Shown in pieces: positions 11,270 through 19,536 of a stretch of DNA of 64,000 nt. Each line of letters starts with the position of its first letter. The first letter of the stretch is position 1. Made by a program: the position numbers and the translations under genes. The stretch comes from Setoptus koraiensis (lineage: Eukaryota > Animalia > Arthropoda). The notes under the pieces are model-generated. The model saw only the letters and a list, made by a program, of their open reading frames with translations. It did no database searches and was not told the DNA's origin. The stretch spans positions 21,204,001 through 21,268,000 of the forward strand of contig CM106585.1 of assembly GCA_048013815.1 (NCBI GenBank), in the 5' to 3' direction.

Positions 11270-12932
11270 TTATACTCTCATTGTGGACAAATTCTCACTT
11301 ACAGTAAACGTACATCCGGTTGATTGTTTTATTTCATCAACAGAAACACCTTCGGCAATCTCCGTTAGTGTCAGGCCTTGATTGGGCAAAAATCTAAAGA
11401 CCGCCTTCTCTGTTATTATTGTATCGACACAACTTGATCCAGTCAAGGGTAAATCACATTTTTCCACTATTTTAGGTTTTCCATCTTTACTACAGTGTTC
11501 CATAACAACTACTAATCTAGTTCCTGAAACACTTGCAGCAGCCAAATCGGCGGCTCCGCCAAAACCCTTGATTAATTTGCCAGGAACCATCCAGTTAGCC
11601 AGGTCTGCAGATTTCGAAACTTGCATACCACCAAGAATAGTGACATCTAAATGACCGCCTCTTATCATAGCGAAAGATTCATCGCTTGGAAAAAATGAGG
11701 CGCCTGGTAAGACGGATACAGTCTCTTTAGCGGCATTGACAAGATCCGCATCTACATCTTTCTCGTCAGGATATGGTCCCATTGCGAGTAGACCATTTTC
11801 GCTGTGGAATGTAACGTTGACACCAGAGGGAAGAAAATTGGCAGTTAGCACGGGCATGCCGATACCAAGATTGACATTCATACCATCTTTCAACTCAAGA
11901 GCGGCTCTCTTGGCTATTCTTTCTCTTGTTAGTTGTGCCCTAGACTTTGTTGATTCATCCTTGGGGGTCATATTCTGTCTTGTGGTGACTTTTTCAATTC
12001 TCTTCTCGTAATTATGTCCTCTAATAATACGATCCACATAAATAGCAGGAATATGCACTTCATCTGGCTTCAATACACCCACATCGACTATCTCCTCGAC
12101 TTCAGCAATTGTCACTTTTGCGGCCTTGCACATGGTCGCATTGAAATTCCTGGCACTCAATCTAAAAATTAAGTTACCTGCCTTATCGGCTTTGTAAGCT
12201 TTCACAAGAGCAAAATCGGCCTTGATGGCCTCCTCCAAAATATAATGTTTACCATTATGTTCAATAGAGGGTTTGGCTTTACTATGCATGACAACATTAC
12301 CATTATTGTCGTATTTGATTGGGGCACCTCCGTGATGAACCAACGTATTATATCCAGTGGGTGTGTAGAACAGAGGGATGCCAGCACCCCCCGCACGTAT
12401 TTTTTCAGCAAGGGTACCCTGGGGCACAAATTCTAGTTCCAGATCTCCGCGTAGATATTGGGCTTCAAAGAGTTTGTTTTCGCCTACATAAGATGATATC
12501 ATGCGTTTGACTTGATTTTGCCTCAGCAGAAGTCCAACTCCGAAGTCGCTAACTCCCACATTATTGCTTACAACAGTGAGTTTATTGATTTCCTTTTTGG
12601 CTGCAAGTGCCGCTATCAAGTGTTCTGTGATAATGTTATATGGGAATGTTTGCGATGATTGGTTGACATGGTGTGACAACTACGATCTGTGACGTTAGTG
12701 ACGAGTGGGAAGAAAGTACAACGGACTCACCTGGTATTCCGCACAATCCAAATCCGCCTGACAATATGAGAGAGTTTGATTTGATGTCGTGAATGGCATC
12801 CTCTGCCTTGTCGAAAATTTTCGCATTGTTGACAGCCGTTACCCTTAGGCCACGCTGAACTGTAGCGAATAGAAGATGTTTTGCGGAATATCCAGTTGAT
12901 GCAGGCGACAGTAACAACGCCAGCGAATTCAT
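11270..12932 (-). CDS. OXCT1: Mitochondrial succinyl-CoA:3-ketoacid CoA transferase (SCOT), ~518 aa; exons 12932-12731 and 12624-11270
   Basis: GGFGLCGIP|EHLI across a 106-nt GT-AG intron (12730-12625). Motifs SYVGEN, PQGTLAE, NLGIGMP, catalytic SENG and MIRGGHLD. Basic amphipathic presequence. Confidence 0.96.
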
Positions 12933-13155
12933 CTTATTCTCACTACCGTCGTCTATTCAAACAGTGGATGATGCAAGATGTTACAAGAGGTAATATAATA
13001 ATGATAATAGTGATAATAACAGCAACTTGTTTGCTGGTTGGACAGAATTCCAATGGACATTGTTTGCCACATTGTTAGATGCGGTTTACTGTTTATATTC
13101 TGACCATTATTTTCTCGTCTTCCACGCCTACTCTCAGTAGCGCCCTCTTGGATGA
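12778..13155. repeat. Duplicated block A, copy 1 (SCOT first 52 codons and upstream region); paralog at ~16443-16817
   Basis: Manual alignment. 13026-13128 is identical over 103 nt to 16688-16790; the coding part is more diverged. Confidence 0.95.
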
Positions 13156-13924
13156 TTCGAAGAGACTAACATTGTGACCAATATAATAACGTTCACCATG
13201 GCTGTGATGCATTAGATTCTACAAGATTGTTGTTGTTGTTGTTGTTGCTGTTACATAATATCTCATCGCAACAGCAACACACAAATTCATCATTGTTGTT
13301 GGATTAGAGAATGAAAGGGTGCGTGTTACCATGTCCAACTATCATCATTATATAATGGATCATAATGTGTGTTGCATAGCCCAAGCCTATTTGACATTTT
13401 CAATAGAGCACCCAACAAAGCTTCATAGCCCCATTTCGTGAGATCACCTGAAGACCTAAAGGGCGACACATGAAACTCGATATGATCGCATAAAATTGAT
13501 TAAATCTCACCATAGCGTCTATTATTTGATAGGTAAAAGCGAAATTTTCATTTCGTAGCATAAACAGACATATAGACTGGTGATAAGTTCAACTACTAAA
13601 CTCCCACGCGTAGCTCGATAACAAGTTGGCCTCACGACAAGCACCGAGCAACGATTTTGGCCATTGTTGCATGACGCAACTTTAATGGTATGCATGAGAG
13701 AATAATGGTAGCTTTACCATTACAAAGATGTGGGATCGCCATCATTGTTGATACCATCTATTTATAAATACATGTTCATCACATATCTCACATTGGAGCT
13801 TCTTCTCGATACATTTCTATATGCCGTAGACATGGGCTGCAAGGTTAACCCTATCTGCTAAAGCTGCATGGGATCTCCCTGTGGTGTACGCTCTGCCGTG
13901 TGCGCTTGGGGTGGGCATTTGTCA

Positions 13925-13929
13925 GTGTG

Positions 13930-14021
<92 letters not shown>
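13925..14021. repeat. (TG)n microsatellite, ~48 units with two interruptions
   Basis: Read directly from the sequence. Confidence 0.97.
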
Positions 14022-14022
<1 letters not shown>

Positions 14023-14681
14023 CACGAAGAAGTGTTCGCTATGTTTCGTGGTCTCTTTCTCTCTGACTCTTTCCATCCCTTATTGATGGCATCAAACTAG
14101 CACCACCGACACTTACGACACACCATGAGAACATAGTGCTAGGCAAGATATTGGTATAGTTGTTGATGTTATCACATTCACTTACAAGTTGGCCATTATT
14201 TGTTTGCCTATTGGTTGCTGCTGTTGGTTGTTGTCAAGCTACAGATCAGATTGGAATCCGCTATCGTTTAATCATTGCCAGCATCGTTATTCATCGTTGC
14301 TACATTATTAATGTAATTCTAGACCTCAAACAGCTCAAAGTAGAATAATTCACATAATATTACCGTACATGTAATAGTATTAGTGATACTAACAATAATA
14401 ATAAATACAGCAAGAGGCGTAGGCAGTGTATTAATCTCAGGAAAGAGTGAACAGCAACAACAAACACGAACGAACGACAACAACAAATACCTCACTAGCA
14501 ATCGAGTGGCATTGAATTGGGCGAGTTATACAGAGCGAAAAGGAGCCAATATAACAACGACAACAGCGCCTCTGGCAAGAACTAGTAAACAACACACACA
14601 CACACGAACACGAAACAACGCTAATGCTTGCTCACTAGGATTAGATGGATTACCAATTGAGGCATATAATTGAGTGATTTC

Positions 14682-14965
14682 ATATATCATTCAATCAAAA
14701 TATAAATACCAAGCTGTGTATCATCCGATGTATCATTTTGATGATCACCAGTATTGATAGCAGCCAATCACAATTGATGCAAACGTATTGATACTCGTCT
14801 ACATATCTACCTGACCATATTTGGATTCATTTACATATATATATATATAAATAACATAATATCTCTATATACTTACATATATATAATACAAAATTCAGTA
14901 ATTATCATTATTATTTATATAAAAAGAATCGTCATTATCTAGCGTCACCATGTCTGGAGAATCAT
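14682..14965. repeat. Duplicated block B, copy 1 (PIP4K2 upstream region and first codons MSGES); paralog at ~17053-17329
   Basis: Manual alignment shows high identity, including CAGCCAATCACAATTGATGC (CCAAT box), ACTCGTCTACATATCTACCTGACCATA and TCACCATGTCTGGAGAATCA. Confidence 0.93.
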
Positions 14966-16167
14966 CAACAATCACTTCCATCAGTAGGTCAATGTCGACC
15001 AAATGCAAGAAGAAACATTTCAAGCCAAAACATCAAAAATCAAAGCTATTTAGAGCAAATGAGCCATTATTATCTGTCTTTATGTGGGGTGTCAACCATA
15101 CAGTAAGCGAATTAAATCATGTCAACATACCAATCATGCTAATGCCCGACGATTTTAAGGCATTCACTAAGGTGCGAGTGGACAATCATTTATATCAAAA
15201 AGATATAATGCCTTCTCATTTTAAAATCAAAGAATATTGCCCTCTTGTATTTCGTAATTTACGAGAACGCTTCTCAATAGATGACAATGATTATCTCAAA
15301 TCATTAACAAAATTTCAACCAGTGGCTGATGATAGTCGCTCCGGCAGGCCAGCGAAATTCTATTCATCATATGATAAACAACTAATTCTAAAGACATTAT
15401 CAGCTGAAGAAGTTGAAAATATGCATCATCTACTAAAAGAATATCATCCCTACATTGTCGAACGTTTTGGTAAGACATTATTGCCGCAATATCTAGGAAT
15501 GTATAGGTTGACTGTGGAAGGCCAAGAAACTTATATAGTGGTTATGCGTAACATATTTAGCTCGCGTTTACCCATACACAAAAAATATGATCTCAAAGGT
15601 TCAAATTTGGATCGCGAAGCTAGCGAAAAGGAACGTGGCAAAGATTTGCCATGCTTTAAAGATAACGACTTCTTGAAAGATGGTGTAAAATTATATTTAG
15701 ATCTTGATAGCAAAGAGAAATTAATTAGTACACTAGAGGCTGATACAACGTTCCTAGCGCGAGAAAATTTAATGGACTATTCCCTATGTCTAGGTATACA
15801 CGATTGTGAAAAATTCCAACAAGAGCAAGCCGACATAAACTCACCAAAATCTACCAGCTCAAATGAGGACGACGAAGAAGCTGATTCTAGTGGCGGAGGT
15901 GGTGGCGGTATAGCGGGGCCAGACACTCCAAATATGAAAAGTCAAGATGGAGATGATACAATGATCGGCGATGTCGGAACCACTGGTAGTATTGGTGTTA
16001 TGAAATCTAGTGTTGCAAATACAAGCGAAAAGCAGATTTATTTCATGGGGCTAGTAGACGTATTAACGCAGTTTGGATTGAGAAAGAGAATAGTCACTGT
16101 TCATCCAGAGCAATACAGAAAAAGGTTTATGGAGTTCATCGCTAAGGCTATCAATATTTCTGGGTAA
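14950..16167 (+). CDS. PIP4K2: Phosphatidylinositol 5-phosphate 4-kinase (type II PIPK), intronless, 405 aa
   Basis: KKKHF...KLFRANEPLLSVFMWGVNH N-terminus, KEYCPLVFRNLRERF, KYDLKGS, LMDYSL and YFMGLVDVLT...PEQY..RF. Confidence 0.95.
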   Translation: MSGESSTITSISRSMSTKCKKKHFKPKHQKSKLFRANEPLLSVFMWGVNHTVSELNHVNIPIMLMPDDFKAFTKVRVDNHLYQKDIMPSHFKIKEYCPLVFRNLRERFSIDDNDYLKSLTKFQPVADDSRSGRPAKFYSSYDKQLILKTLSAEEVENMHHLLKEYHPYIVERFGKTLLPQYLGMYRLTVEGQETYIVVMRNIFSSRLPIHKKYDLKGSNLDREASEKERGKDLPCFKDNDFLKDGVKLYLDLDSKEKLISTLEADTTFLARENLMDYSLCLGIHDCEKFQQEQADINSPKSTSSNEDDEEADSSGGGGGGIAGPDTPNMKSQDGDDTMIGDVGTTGSIGVMKSSVANTSEKQIYFMGLVDVLTQFGLRKRIVTVHPEQYRKRFMEFIAKAINISG

Positions 16168-16594
16168 TTGTAGAGCGAGCATTTTGAACTGCATCAGTGT
16201 TATGCGTTCCATCGCACAAAGGCTTGTTTTTCGTATGCTTACAATTACAAAACCAATAAATTTTGTCTTCATGAGATTCAAACCTGACCGGCCTATTCTT
16301 GATTTTCATCTTGGCATCTTTGTGTGTCCCATCACAGAATGGTTGATTTCGACTGAAGCCACAAGAGCACCACATATAGACTTTTTTGGCCTTGCATTCA
16401 AACTTAAACGGTCTTTTTGCATAAATGTGACCGTCTCGATCAGATTTGATGTCTTCAACGGCATCCTCTGCCTTGTTGGAGAATATAGAACTTTTGATGG
16501 TCGTTATCCTCAAGCAACGCTGAGCTGTTGTGAATATCAGATGTCTTGCGGGATTTGCGGTCGACGGAGAGAGCAACAACGCCAGTGAATTCAT
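16151..16594 (-). CDS. CISD3: CDGSH iron-sulfur domain protein 3 (MiNT-like) with a SCOT-derived N-terminus, 147 aa
   Basis: Two tandem CDGSH motifs, WCSCGFSRNQPFCDGTH and FCNCKHTKNKPLCDGTH, with no TM helix. Confidence 0.92.
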   Translation of the reverse strand: MNSLALLLSPSTANPARHLIFTTAQRCLRITTIKSSIFSNKAEDAVEDIKSDRDGHIYAKRPFKFECKAKKVYMWCSCGFSRNQPFCDGTHKDAKMKIKNRPVRFESHEDKIYWFCNCKHTKNKPLCDGTHNTDAVQNARSTITQKY

Positions 16595-16817
16595 CTTGTT
16601 CTCAACCCCGTCGCCTATTCAAACAGTGGATGACACAAGATGTAACAAGAGGTAGTATAGTAATAATAATAATGATAGTAACAGCAGCTTGTTTGCTGGT
16701 TGGACAGAATTCCAATGGACATTGTTTGCCACATTGTTAGATGCGGTTTACTGTTTATATTCTGACCATTATTTTCTCGTCTTCCACGCCCACTTTCAGT
16801 AGCGCCCTCTCAATGAT
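16443..16817. repeat. Duplicated block A, copy 2 (CISD3 N-terminus and upstream region)
   Basis: Paralog of 12778-13155. Confidence 0.95.
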
Positions 16818-17052
16818 CACATAATACTACCGTGCCATGTGGAAATCTGCCAATGTCTCTGGCTTTAGTTCAGGGAAAAACCGCTCGAGGTCGCTTTTTG
16901 TACAAGCATTTTCCGTGCGTGAGATTCAGTGAGCATCCGAAAAACAAATCAGCAAGAAAAAAAGAAGAAAAAACGCAACATTTATCGAGACACTTCAGGT
17001 TTTCCGATCCATTTTTTGGCTGATGCGAGCGCCCCTCGCGTCTTTTTCTTTT

Positions 17053-17329
17053 ATACATCATTCAATCAAAATATAAATACTAACCTGTGTATCATCAAAT
17101 GTATCATTTTGATGATCACTAGCGCTGATAGCAGCCAATCACAATTGATGCAAACATATTGATACTCGTCTACATATCTACCTGACCATACTTGGATTCA
17201 TTTACATCTACATATAAAGAACATAATATCTCCATATACTTGCACATATAATACAAAATTTAGTAATTATAATTATCATTTATATAAAAGAATCGTCAGT
17301 ATCTAGCCTCACCATGTCTGGAGAATCAC
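17053..17329. repeat. Duplicated block B, copy 2 (CARS1 upstream region and first codons)
   Basis: Paralog of 14682-14965. Confidence 0.93.
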
Positions 17330-19536
17330 CAATCAGAATATTGAACTCCTTCAGTCGAGCCCTCGAATCTCTCGTTCCGATCCAGAGCAAAAGCATCAGG
17401 TGGTATACTTGTGGGCCAACTGTCTACGCTCCCTCTCATCTCGGCCATGCAAGGTGTTACATGACTTTCGACATTATACGTAGGATATTATTGGATTATT
17501 TTGGTTACCAAGTTCAATATGTTATGAATATCACTGATATAGATGATAAAATAATTAAGACAGCCAGATGTGACTACTTGTACGATCAATACAAGACTAA
17601 AGTTTTGGATAGCGTGGCAAACAATTCCTTTGATCCGACGAAATTCAACAATGACCTCGAAGAGGCTCTATCAGCATATAGACAAAAAACTGAAAAGGAA
17701 AATGACGTTAACAAAAGAAGGATGTACCAAGAAAACGTGGAAAAATTTCTTGCCGACTTGGAGCGTTTTCGAGGGAGCTCACTAAAAGAAGTAAAGGAAC
17801 TACTGCCTGACAGACTGGACACGAGGCATCTCAGGGATATAATCTCTGACCAACTCGACTCTCAATACGGTGAAACTGTCATTGATCACGCTATATTCAA
17901 GAAATTGACATTGGAATATGAGCAGAAATTTCATGAAGATATGAGAAGGCTCAATATTCTTGAGCCAAGTACATTGACTAGAGTAAGCGCACATATTGAA
18001 AATATTGATAAATATATTCAACAAATTGAGTCGAACGGATTCGCCTATAAATCTAACGGTTCGGTATATTTTGACACGAACAAATTTGCCAAAGATCAAA
18101 AACACACCTACGCAAAACTTTCTAATCGAAGTATTGAAGCAGCCAGTAGCCGAAGACAAGATCTAGATGAGGCAGATGGTGAATTATCTAATCTCTCCGA
18201 CAAAAGGTGCCCGGAGGACTTTGCTCTATGGAAAAAGTCAAAACCTGGCGAACCGAGTTGGAAATCTACCACCTATGATGACGGACGCCCTGGTTGGCAC
18301 ATTGAATGTTCCGTCATGGCAAGCCATATCCTCGGAAATCAATTCGATTTGCATTCTGGGGGTTGTGACCTCAAGTTTCCTCATCATGATAACGAGATTG
18401 CCCAAGCTGAAGCAAAAATAAATACCGGACACAATTGGGTCAACTATTTTATCCACTCTGGTCACCTTCATATTGCAGGATGCAAGATGTCAAAATCTCT
18501 AAAAAACTTCGTAACAATAGCTGAAGCTTTGGAGAAATACTCCGCATTACAGTTGAGGCTTCTTTTTCTGAGTCATAACTGGACGGAAACTTTAGACTAT
18601 TCTGACGACACTATGAAGCGTGCACTGAGTATAGAAAAACGAGTGAATGATTTCTTTCTCATAGTAAAGGATCGATTAAGAGATCCCCATGCTGGAGGGG
18701 ACGCAGCAAACCCTTCCATAGAAACTATTTTCGTTGAGTGGACACAGAGTGACATAGAAATGAATCAAGAATTTTTAAACACAACACAATTGATAGATGA
18801 GTCGTTACGTGATAATTTCAATACCAAGCGGGCTGTTGATCTCACGCTGGAGCTCATCGCAAAAGTCTACAAGAAAGAGTCGTGCAACTTGATTCTATTG
18901 AGAGATATAGCCGCATTCATTCATAAATTATTTAGAATATTCGGTGCAAATTTTAATAGTTTTCAACCAAGGACGCACATTGTGGAAATTCCTGATCAGG
19001 CCCCTCAAGAGAATTTTGAAAATGGTCAATCCACTGAAGTCCTTTATAGTTATATGGATACCTTGGCCAGTTTTCGATCCAAAGTTAGAGAGGTGGCTAA
19101 GAAAGGACAGACTCCGTCTGATTTTGTCGACATTCTCAAACTATGTGATGAACTTCGCGACACGATCTTGCCGGAGATGGGTGTTCGTCTGCAGGATAAA
19201 GAAGATGTGAAAGGTAAACCCTATGTGCTCGAACTGGTTGATAAAGAAACCATGATGAGAGAGAAAGCCTTGGCAGAAAAGTTGAAGTATGAAAAAATGA
19301 ATGAAAAATTGAAGCAACTAGAATTACAAAAACAAAAAGATGACCAAAAGAAGATACCACCAAGTGAAATGTTCAAAGATCAAAAGGACAGATTCTCTCA
19401 ATTCGACGCTGAAGGTTTACCTACCCACGATGCCGAGGGTCAAGTATTGCCCAAGTCCCAAGTTAGCAAGCTGAAAAGGTTACAGAAGGACCAAGAGAAA
19501 AAGTACAAGAAGTACTTGGAGTCTATCAAGCAATAA
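17314..19536 (+). CDS. CARS1: Cytosolic cysteinyl-tRNA synthetase, intronless, 740 aa
   Basis: WYTCGPTVY, HIGH-type HLGH, ITDIDDKII, DFALWK, GRPGWHIECS, DLKFPHHDNE and KMSKSLKNF, with a eukaryotic C-terminal extension. Confidence 0.98.
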   Translation: MSGESPIRILNSFSRALESLVPIQSKSIRWYTCGPTVYAPSHLGHARCYMTFDIIRRILLDYFGYQVQYVMNITDIDDKIIKTARCDYLYDQYKTKVLDSVANNSFDPTKFNNDLEEALSAYRQKTEKENDVNKRRMYQENVEKFLADLERFRGSSLKEVKELLPDRLDTRHLRDIISDQLDSQYGETVIDHAIFKKLTLEYEQKFHEDMRRLNILEPSTLTRVSAHIENIDKYIQQIESNGFAYKSNGSVYFDTNKFAKDQKHTYAKLSNRSIEAASSRRQDLDEADGELSNLSDKRCPEDFALWKKSKPGEPSWKSTTYDDGRPGWHIECSVMASHILGNQFDLHSGGCDLKFPHHDNEIAQAEAKINTGHNWVNYFIHSGHLHIAGCKMSKSLKNFVTIAEALEKYSALQLRLLFLSHNWTETLDYSDDTMKRALSIEKRVNDFFLIVKDRLRDPHAGGDAANPSIETIFVEWTQSDIEMNQEFLNTTQLIDESLRDNFNTKRAVDLTLELIAKVYKKESCNLILLRDIAAFIHKLFRIFGANFNSFQPRTHIVEIPDQAPQENFENGQSTEVLYSYMDTLASFRSKVREVAKKGQTPSDFVDILKLCDELRDTILPEMGVRLQDKEDVKGKPYVLELVDKETMMREKALAEKLKYEKMNEKLKQLELQKQKDDQKKIPPSEMFKDQKDRFSQFDAEGLPTHDAEGQVLPKSQVSKLKRLQKDQEKKYKKYLESIKQ

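What the first reader, a model, noticed from the sequence alone, without database searches (positions are those of the whole stretch)
16443..16594. CISD3 is a chimera carrying the SCOT mitochondrial presequence
SEEN: CISD3 residues 1-51 align to SCOT residues 1-52 with 29 identities ([10 protein letters not shown]...A.HL.F.T.QR.LR.T...KAEDA..DIKS). CISD3 then switches to CDGSH-family sequence (GHIYAKRPFKF). KNOWN: the [10 protein letters not shown] segment corresponds to the start of the mature CoA-transferase domain, just before the GGFGLCGIP motif, and CISD3/MiNT is a mitochondrial matrix protein. INFERENCE: the breakpoint lies inside mature SCOT, so SCOT donated its targeting peptide plus ~12 mature residues. 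This would be a local case of presequence piracy, better known from plant organelle-to-nucleus transfers.
Basis: partly seen in the sequence, partly recalled or inferred. Interest (0 to 1): 0.75.

Follow-up and report, generated by a model that had tools for sequence, protein, structure and literature searches.

The report
CISD3 with borrowed SCOT leader
In this intron-poor, probably mite genome, the small mitochondrial iron-sulfur protein gene CISD3 starts with a copy of the promoter, mRNA leader and first 51 codons of its neighbour, the ketone-body enzyme SCOT: a real, transcribed hybrid gene, and one more example of a known way of acquiring an import signal.

Summary

- **The match.** The 147-aa two-CDGSH ORF (16151-16594, minus strand) shares 31 of 53 N-terminal residues with SCOT exon 1 (E 4e-18).
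- **Extent.** The DNA homology runs 12778-13152 against 16443-16814. It covers promoter, TATA box, 5'UTR, ATG and 51 codons, and stops abruptly after the DIKS codons.
- **Direction.** SCOT is the donor. Residues 37/38-51 align with the first residues of crystallised mature pig SCOT and with a motif conserved in 30 related SCOTs. Other CISD3 proteins lack it.
- **Expression.** RNA-like contigs, which are spliced across the SCOT intron, run unbroken through the junction.
- **Age.** A related species (L001) keeps the same promoter motif, the same junction and a much-decayed SCOT-like leader, so the fusion probably predates the species split.
- **Later history.** In the window the two upstream copies are 92% identical (about 100 nt identical), against 64% between SCOT orthologs. 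This points to later gene conversion.
- **Not shown.** Import and cleavage were not tested.
- **Earlier findings.** The scan's notes report other "front-end captures" on other DNA of this genome, involving different genes. This is therefore one more member of a known kind, inside a possibly unusual genome-wide pattern.

The parts
16151..16594 (-). Chimeric CISD3-like coding sequence, 147 aa, no intron
   Evidence: ORF list. Pfam zf-CDGSH, two stretches. Human CISD3 structure 6avj, E 5e-17. dN/dS of the mature part against L001 is 0.035/0.92.
16443..16594 (-). SCOT-derived segment: codons 1-51 (presequence plus about 14-15 mature SCOT residues, ending DIKS)
   Evidence: Scores 20.2 bits against a profile of 30 outgroup SCOT N-termini; 0 of 1000 shuffles reach that.
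16151..16442 (-). Native CISD3 part, with two 3Cys-1His CDGSH motifs (at 16322-16369 and 16202-16249)
   Evidence: Motif scan. Alignment with 12 CISD3 proteins. AF2 pLDDT 65-88 over residues 61-140.
16595..16814 (-). Copy 2 of the SCOT upstream block: 5'UTR, TATAAA (16754-16759) and a conserved 31-nt motif (16781-16811)
   Evidence: 92% identical to 12933-13152, with about 100 nt identical. RNA-like contigs reach 16717. The motif is found only at the two copies in the 64 kb window and in L001 and L002.
12731..12932 (-). SCOT exon 1, the donor. The donated coding part is 12778-12932.
   Evidence: The ortholog in L002 has the same exon.
12933..13152 (-). Copy 1 of the upstream block (SCOT promoter and 5'UTR; TATAAA at 13092-13097)
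12625..12730 (-). SCOT intron (GT..AG, 106 nt)
   Evidence: Loose ends of X4 contigs join 12731 to the start of exon 2.
11270..12624 (-). SCOT exon 2 (CoA_trans domains, SENG active-site motif)
   Evidence: Pfam E 6e-105. SENG at residue 342.
14678..14968 (+). Block B copy 1: upstream region and first 6 codons (MSGES) of the PIP4K-like gene
17049..17332 (+). Block B copy 2: upstream region and first 6 codons (MSGES) of cysteinyl-tRNA synthetase
   Evidence: The distal part is also present upstream of the relative's CysRS (L087).
14950..16167 (+). PIP4K-like gene. Its 3' end overlaps the CISD3 3' end by 17 nt, tail to tail.
   Evidence: Pfam PIP5K. The same tail-to-tail overlap is seen in L001.

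Best explanation
A DNA segment holding the SCOT promoter (a conserved 31-nt motif plus a TATA box), its roughly 125-nt 5'UTR, the start codon and the first 51 codons was copied 3.66 kb away. It was joined in frame to the body of the CISD3 gene and replaced CISD3's own front end.

The captured codons encode the SCOT mitochondrial presequence, its processing region and about 14-15 residues of mature SCOT. CISD3 is therefore now transcribed from a SCOT-type promoter. It is most likely imported into the matrix, and cleaved, by means of the SCOT leader. The mature protein would keep a short SCOT-derived tail (about SIFSNKAEDAVEDIKS) ahead of the two CDGSH domains.

The copy was part of a larger duplication of the whole head-to-head intergenic cassette: block A on the SCOT/CISD3 side and block B on the PIP4K/CysRS side. 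The fusion probably arose before the split from the L001 species. In the window's lineage the two copies were later re-homogenised by gene conversion, most recently over the upstream block.

Shown here: the homology, its limits, its direction, colinear transcription and purifying selection on the gene. Inferred: import, the cleavage site, the age of the fusion and gene conversion. My confidence by step: chimera by DNA copy from SCOT about 0.95; working presequence about 0.8; shared ancestry with L001 plus later conversion about 0.65.
For: - **Homology.** Protein and DNA homology with sharp limits.
- **Donor polarity.** Pfam coordinates, mature pig SCOT chains starting at the residue aligned to SCOT 37/38, the motif conserved in 30 outgroup SCOTs, and its absence from other CISD3 proteins.
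- **Transcription.** Runs X4 and X5 give contigs that skip the SCOT intron and leave the intergenic DNA uncovered. These contigs are colinear over 14931-16661 and 16632-16717 with no differences. They end about 40 nt downstream of the conserved TATAAA.
- **Independent assembly.** Contigs from at least 3 studies span the junction.
- **Leader features.** No acidic residue before position 43, 5 Lys+Arg, 11 Ser+Thr, and an R-2-type site at R29, like SCOT. There is no TM-like segment. AF2 gives pLDDT below 50 for residues 1-58.
- **Selection.** Mature CISD3 dN 0.035 against dS 0.92 versus L001. Leader dN/dS is about 0.36, similar to the SCOT leader at 0.34.
- **Shared fusion.** L001 has the same upstream motif and the same PIP4K tail-to-tail neighbour. 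Its leader scores 39-44 against SCOT leaders, while 32 control CISD3 leaders average 19-20 with a maximum of 25-35.
- **Gene conversion.** Paralogous upstream blocks are 92% identical, against 64% for orthologous SCOT upstream regions (window versus L002). Coding codons 11-51 are 75% (paralogs) against 81% (orthologs).
Against: - No import, cleavage or localisation data exist, and no dedicated predictor (TargetP, MitoFates) was available.
- The RNA evidence consists of unstranded contigs. One of them also covers the convergent PIP4K gene, so it shows neither the strand nor the true 5' end.
- L001's similarity to SCOT covers only residues 1-37, not the mature SCOT part. A profile of outgroup SCOT leaders scores L001 (9.8 bits) no higher than one unrelated mosquito CISD3 leader (10.3 bits). 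The shared-ancestry claim therefore rests on pairwise scores, the promoter motif and the junction.
- dS values from 44-51 codons are noisy.
- A second CISD3 copy with a native leader elsewhere in the genome cannot be excluded from a 64-kb window.
Confidence: 0.78

Rival explanations
1. A single recent capture in the window's lineage only. L001 keeps the original CISD3 leader, and its weak likeness to SCOT and the shared upstream motif reflect common regulation of mitochondrial genes and generic presequence features.
For: L001's leader is only 34-39% identical to the SCOT or window leaders. The profile test was not specific. The window's CISD3 leader is about as far from SCOT (dS 0.43-0.58) as the SCOT orthologs are from each other (0.47).
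Against: L001's leader scores above all 32 control CISD3 leaders against both SCOT leaders. The 31-nt motif plus the TAAACAG and AATGTGG elements lie in the same order upstream of L001's CISD3. The motif occurs nowhere else in the window. The junction I-x-S/T-(D)-R-D...G-H reads the same in both species.
Confidence: 0.15
2. Reverse polarity: the leader belonged to CISD3 and SCOT took it.
For: For residues 1-36 alone, polarity cannot be read from the two window genes.
Against: Residues 37/38-51 are part of the mature CoA-transferase fold in all SCOTs, including solved structures. The region just before them (R.L..T...) also fits the outgroup SCOT consensus. Outgroup CISD3 leaders (P0002, L007, insects) are unrelated.
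Confidence: 0.03
3. The SCOT-like stretch is not part of the protein: an untranslated leader, a downstream start, or a dying gene.
For: No protein-level data exist.
Against: The stretch is in frame with no stop. The next Met is residue 74, just before the first CDGSH motif. The leader's dN/dS is about 0.36, not about 1. The mature part is under strong constraint. RNA-like contigs are colinear.
Confidence: 0.04
4. Assembly artefact: two near-identical promoter blocks caused a false join.
For: Short-read contigs break at 12997 and 16661 inside the repeat.
Against: The junction at 16443 lies 220 nt inside single contigs from runs of at least 3 studies, with no differences. The coding copies differ by 25%. 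L001 shows the same gene layout in another species.
Confidence: 0.01

Closest known systems
Presequence or transit-peptide capture by organelle genes moved to the plant nucleus (for example rps14 in sdh2, rps11 with atp2/coxVb leaders, cytochrome c1/GapC; recalled from memory. Recent plant cases: PMC7488351, PMC8018952)
   Same: A targeting peptide is obtained by copying or joining the 5' end of another nuclear gene for an organelle protein. A few mature donor residues often come along.
   Different: Here the recipient is an old nuclear gene that already had a leader, so this is replacement and not first acquisition. It occurs in an animal. The promoter and 5'UTR came along. No intron or exon shuffling is involved.
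Chimeric genes formed by partial duplication, where the 5' parent gives the promoter and N-terminus (surveys in rice, PMC3673630; Drosophila surveys recalled from memory)
   Same: The 5' parent supplies regulation and N-terminal codons, the 3' parent supplies the domain, and the parents lie close together.
   Different: Here the chimera is not an extra young gene but apparently the working CISD3. It is shared by two species and was later homogenised with its donor.
Other front-end captures noted by this scan in the same genome (mt IleRS/MRPL14, AsnRS/CCT4, RNF113A/ABCF1, NOP2 and SLC30A9, eEF2/RpS24)
   Same: Promoter, leader and first codons are copied from a nearby gene onto an unrelated essential gene. 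One other case also involves a mitochondrial leader, and one also reports re-overwriting in a sister species.
   Different: Different genes and places. I did not test those notes.
GLUD2 targeting-sequence adaptation in hominoids (PMC2478720)
   Same: An animal example of change in a mitochondrial leader after duplication.
   Different: GLUD2 changed by point substitutions in its own leader, not by capture of a foreign one.
CISD3/MiNT (human structure 6avj; PMC11145280, PMC7864470)
   Same: A single chain with two CDGSH 2Fe-2S motifs, soluble, and mitochondrial in human and C. elegans.
   Different: The N-terminal 51 residues are of SCOT origin.

Membership tests
CISD3/MiNT (two-CDGSH NEET protein) | Two CDGSH motifs C-x-C-x2-(S/T)-x3-P-x-C-D-G-(S/A/T)-H in one chain | tested here: met
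   Residues 76-91 and 116-131. Pfam zf-CDGSH, 2 stretches, E 8e-19.
CISD3/MiNT (two-CDGSH NEET protein) | Sequence kinship with solved or annotated CISD3 | tested here: met
   6avj E 5e-17. Best named hits are annotated CISD3 of insects at 41-58% identity.
CISD3/MiNT (two-CDGSH NEET protein) | No membrane anchor (unlike CISD1 and CISD2) | tested here: met
   The highest 19-residue Kyte-Doolittle mean is 0.75.
CISD3/MiNT (two-CDGSH NEET protein) | Mitochondrial matrix location through a cleaved presequence | not testable with these tools
   Only composition and motif features of a presequence are available. No predictor or experiment.
SCOT/OXCT1 (the donor gene) | Two CoA_trans domains, GGFGLCGIP near the mature N-terminus, SENG active-site motif | tested here: met
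   Pfam E 6e-105. 518-aa spliced product with SENG at residue 342. 60-64% identity to named animal SCOTs.
Chimeric gene by 5'-module capture | DNA homology covers upstream region, ATG and N-terminal codons, and ends abruptly in frame | tested here: met
   12778-13152 against 16443-16814. Identity falls from 87% to 35% within 30 nt past the DIKS codons.
Chimeric gene by 5'-module capture | The donor is identifiable from residues that belong to its conserved domain | tested here: met
Chimeric gene by 5'-module capture | The chimeric form is transcribed | tested here: met
   Spliced, exon-only contigs of runs X4 and X5 are colinear over the junction. Strand and 5' end are not shown.
Chimeric gene by 5'-module capture | The captured peptide is functional in targeting | not testable with these tools
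   Needs an import assay or N-terminomics.
Concerted evolution (gene conversion) of the two cassettes | Paralogs are more alike than orthologs in the same region, with a tract boundary | tested here: met
   Upstream 92% (paralogs) against 64% (orthologs). Codons 11-51 are 75% against 81%. Only one ortholog was available and no formal conversion test was run.

The most novel reading that the evidence does not exclude
This is not a one-off. In this lineage of tiny mites, whole gene front ends (promoter, leader, first codons) may be repeatedly copied between neighbouring genes and kept alike by gene conversion. Unrelated genes such as SCOT and CISD3 would then come under one regulatory module and one import signal. 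That would be a lineage-specific mode of gene and regulatory evolution, and I did not find it in the eriophyoid genome paper I searched.
Probability: 0.35. Interest if true: 0.7.

Novelty: new member of a known kind. Interest (0 to 1): 0.45.

Why it matters
This is a clean animal example in which the donor, the breakpoint and the direction of a mitochondrial presequence capture can all be read from the DNA. The promoter came along with the leader, and the two copies evolved in concert afterwards.

It shows that an essential matrix protein can exchange its import signal without harm. It also places SCOT and CISD3 under the same promoter type, which predicts that they are co-expressed.

Taken together with the scan's other notes on this genome, it supports testing whether front-end swapping is a general feature of streamlined mite genomes.

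Tried and rejected
- **Metagenome scan with the single protein.** No relatives found. With an alignment it returned only distant, mostly bacterial CDGSH loci, plus one intron-poor eukaryote contig (L007) with an ordinary short leader and an ERO1 neighbour.
- **Rfam on the whole window.** No match.
- **Profile of outgroup SCOT leaders as a test of L001's leader.** Not specific, because an unrelated mosquito CISD3 leader scored as high. I replaced it with a comparison against real control leaders.
- **Cluster look-up to tie L001 to L002's sample.** No information.
- **AF2.** It says nothing about the leader beyond low confidence.
- **Polarity of block B (PIP4K or CysRS as owner of MSGES).** Unresolved. 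The relative's CysRS starts MSSDLRILNSF, followed by an intron, and the relative's PIP4K 5' end was not recovered.
- **Synteny in more distant SCOT relatives (L003, L004).** Not conserved, so the ancestral gene order could not be read.
- **Formation model.** A simple tandem duplication ending at 16442/16443 would explain the CISD3 junction but needs a second deletion to explain the CysRS junction. I could not choose between that and a templated repair copy.

Full report
**What is there.**
The window is intron-poor eukaryotic DNA. On the minus strand, 16151-16594 is an unbroken 147-aa ORF with two CDGSH iron-sulfur motifs. It matches the human CISD3 structure 6avj (E 5e-17) and annotated insect CISD3 proteins.

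About 3.7 kb away, also on the minus strand, lies succinyl-CoA:3-ketoacid CoA-transferase (SCOT). Its exon 1 is 12731-12932, a 106-nt intron is 12625-12730, and exon 2 is 11270-12624. The product is 518 aa and carries the SENG active-site motif.

The first 52 residues of the CISD3 ORF align with the first 53 of SCOT at 31 identities, E 4e-18. The alignment score is 143, against 20 +/- 4 for shuffles.

**Extent at DNA level.**
The likeness is a DNA duplication, not only a protein resemblance. Region 12778-13152 corresponds to 16443-16814.

- **Proximal limit.** It is sharp. Identity is 87-88% over the codons for KAEDA..DIKS and drops to 35% within 30 nt. From there SCOT continues with [15 protein letters not shown] and the other gene with DRDGHIYAKRPFKFE.
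- **Distal limit.** It lies just upstream of a 31-nt motif (16781-16811 and its twin near 13118-13149).
- **Content.** The copied unit holds this motif, a TATAAA box (16754-16759 and 13092-13097), a 5'UTR of about 125 nt, the ATG and 51 codons.
- **Motif frequency.** The motif occurs only at these two places in the 64 kb window.

**Direction.**
SCOT is the donor, on four lines of evidence.

- The Pfam CoA_trans profile starts at SCOT residue 41.
- Chains of crystallised mature pig SCOT (1m3e, 1ooz and others) begin at the residue aligned with SCOT residue 37/38.
- The motif I[YF]..A..A[IV].D[IV]K ahead of GGFGLCGIP is present in 30 unnamed related SCOTs and in spider, beetle, Daphnia and vertebrate SCOTs.
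- A profile of the 30 outgroup N-termini scores the CISD3 leader at 20.2 bits over its whole length; 0 of 1000 shuffles reach that. No other CISD3 in the alignment has this segment.

The chimera therefore carries the SCOT presequence, its processing region and about 14-15 mature SCOT residues.

**Is it expressed as such?**
No run is on record as RNA. However, runs X4 and X5, which are labelled with a different organism from the best DNA holders, behave as RNA. Their contigs join SCOT exon 1 to exon 2 across the intron, and they leave both intergenic regions uncovered.

In these runs one contig covers 14931-16661 and another covers 16632-16717, with no differences from the window and no joints. 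Transcribed sequence is therefore colinear through the junction at 16443 and for at least 123 nt upstream of the ATG. It ends about 40 nt downstream of the TATA box.

The contigs stop at 12997 and 16661 in all runs because of the repeat, not because a transcript ends there. They are unstranded and also cover the convergent PIP4K-like gene, so strand and exact 5' end remain unproven.

The next in-frame Met is residue 74, two residues before the first CDGSH motif, so no sensible downstream start exists. DNA contigs from at least three studies span the junction, which excludes a mis-assembly.

**Age and later history.**
A 918-nt metagenome contig (L001) from a related species encodes the closest CISD3.

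- **Divergence.** The mature part is 91.5% identical, with dN 0.035 and dS 0.92.
- **Neighbour.** It has the same PIP4K gene overlapping tail to tail.
- **Upstream region.** It has the same 31-nt motif and the TAAACAG and AATGTGG elements in the same order.
- **Leader.** It is much diverged but still scores 39-44 against the two SCOT leaders. Thirty-two control CISD3 leaders average 19-20, with a maximum of 25-35.
- **Junction.** It reads I-x-S/T-(D)-R-D...G-H in both species.

I therefore think the fusion predates the split of the two species. This rests on modest scores, and a profile test was not specific.

Within the window, the two upstream blocks are 92% identical, with about 100 nt identical. 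The orthologous SCOT upstream region of a close relative (L002; SCOT 93.6% aa identity, dS 0.79) is only 64% identical. In codons 11-51 the order is reversed: paralogs 75%, orthologs 81%. Constraint alone cannot make paralogs more alike than orthologs. This pattern points to gene conversion between the copies, most recently over the upstream block.

The window's CISD3 leader is as close to SCOT (dS 0.43-0.58) as the SCOT orthologs are to each other (0.47). It is far from L001's leader (dS about 1.8). That fits an earlier conversion over the coding part as well. These values come from about 50 codons and are rough.

**How it most likely works.**
The leader has the usual features of a matrix presequence:

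- no acidic residue before position 43;
- five Lys+Arg and eleven Ser+Thr;
- an R-2-type site at R29 in the same place as in SCOT.

It has no membrane-like segment and is modelled without structure. Its dN/dS is about 0.36, the same as for the SCOT leader, so it is constrained.

By homology with mature pig SCOT, cleavage should fall near residues 30-37. That would leave a short SCOT-derived tail on mature CISD3. Import and cleavage are inferred, not shown.

**Context.**
A second duplicated block (14678-14968 against 17049-17332, 91-94% identical) lies in front of the PIP4K-like gene and of cysteinyl-tRNA synthetase. Both genes start MSGES. The whole head-to-head intergenic cassette was therefore duplicated: SCOT and PIP4K flank one copy, CISD3 and CysRS flank the other.

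In the relative, CysRS keeps the distal part of block B but starts MSSDLRILNSF, and it has an intron that the window lacks. The owner of block B is unresolved.

Several observations fit a streamlined mite: the best named SCOT hits are ticks, spiders and a trombidiform mite, the genes are nearly intron-free, and the transcripts turn up in runs labelled as another organism. The scan's earlier notes call it an eriophyoid mite, and published eriophyoid genomes have more than 80% intronless genes (PMC7738191). I did not verify the species.

Those notes also list other front-end captures elsewhere in this genome. I did not test them.

**Comparison and novelty.**
Capture of a targeting peptide from another gene is well known in plants for organelle genes moved to the nucleus. 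Chimeric genes whose 5' parent gives promoter and N-terminus are known in flies and rice (and my own knowledge).

This case differs in being an animal gene that already had a leader, in bringing the promoter along, and in showing concerted evolution with its donor. The eriophyoid genome paper I searched does not contain the terms promoter, bidirectional or gene conversion, and its one use of 'chimeric' refers to an assembly artefact.

I rate it a new member of a known kind, of moderate interest on its own. The interest would be higher if the genome-wide pattern holds.

Noticed in passing
window 14678-14968 and 17049-17332: The PIP4K-like gene and cysteinyl-tRNA synthetase share about 280 nt of upstream DNA (91-94% identical, with a CCAAT box) and their first 6 codons (MSGES). 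The relative's CysRS (L087) starts MSSDLRILNSF instead.
   Followed up: partly
window 16781-16811 and about 13118-13149; L001 37-68; L002 56-85: A 31-nt motif (core AGAGGGCGCTA, then GGGCGTGG) sits about 20 nt upstream of the TATA box. It is conserved in both copies and in two related contigs. Its core resembles the CTCF-type consensus AGRKGGCRSY (from memory). It is absent from the rest of the window.
   Followed up: partly
window 16862-17045: Word depth in DNA runs is about 20-25 times that of the flanks. This indicates a dispersed short repeat inserted between the two promoter blocks of cassette copy 2. The window holds only one copy.
   Followed up: partly
window 16151-16167; L001 685-701: The PIP4K-like gene and CISD3 overlap tail to tail by 17 nt, including both stop codons. 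The overlap is conserved in the related species.
   Followed up: partly
L087 267-342 versus window 17314-17400: The relative's CysRS has an intron after codon 13 that the window's gene lacks. This is a recent intron loss or gain between close relatives.
   Followed up: no
window 12625-12730; L002 about 499-595; L003 10001-11542: SCOT keeps one intron at the GIP|E position in the window and in its close relative. A more distant relative (L003) has an intronless SCOT.
   Followed up: no
L006 777-2637; L007 5959-7629: In two more distant intron-poor eukaryote contigs, CISD3 has an ordinary short leader and lies tail to tail with ERO1, not with PIP4K.
   Followed up: partly
window 13899-14035: A long (GT)n microsatellite lies inside the 1.5-kb middle part of cassette copy 1. 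Short-read contigs break there.
   Followed up: no
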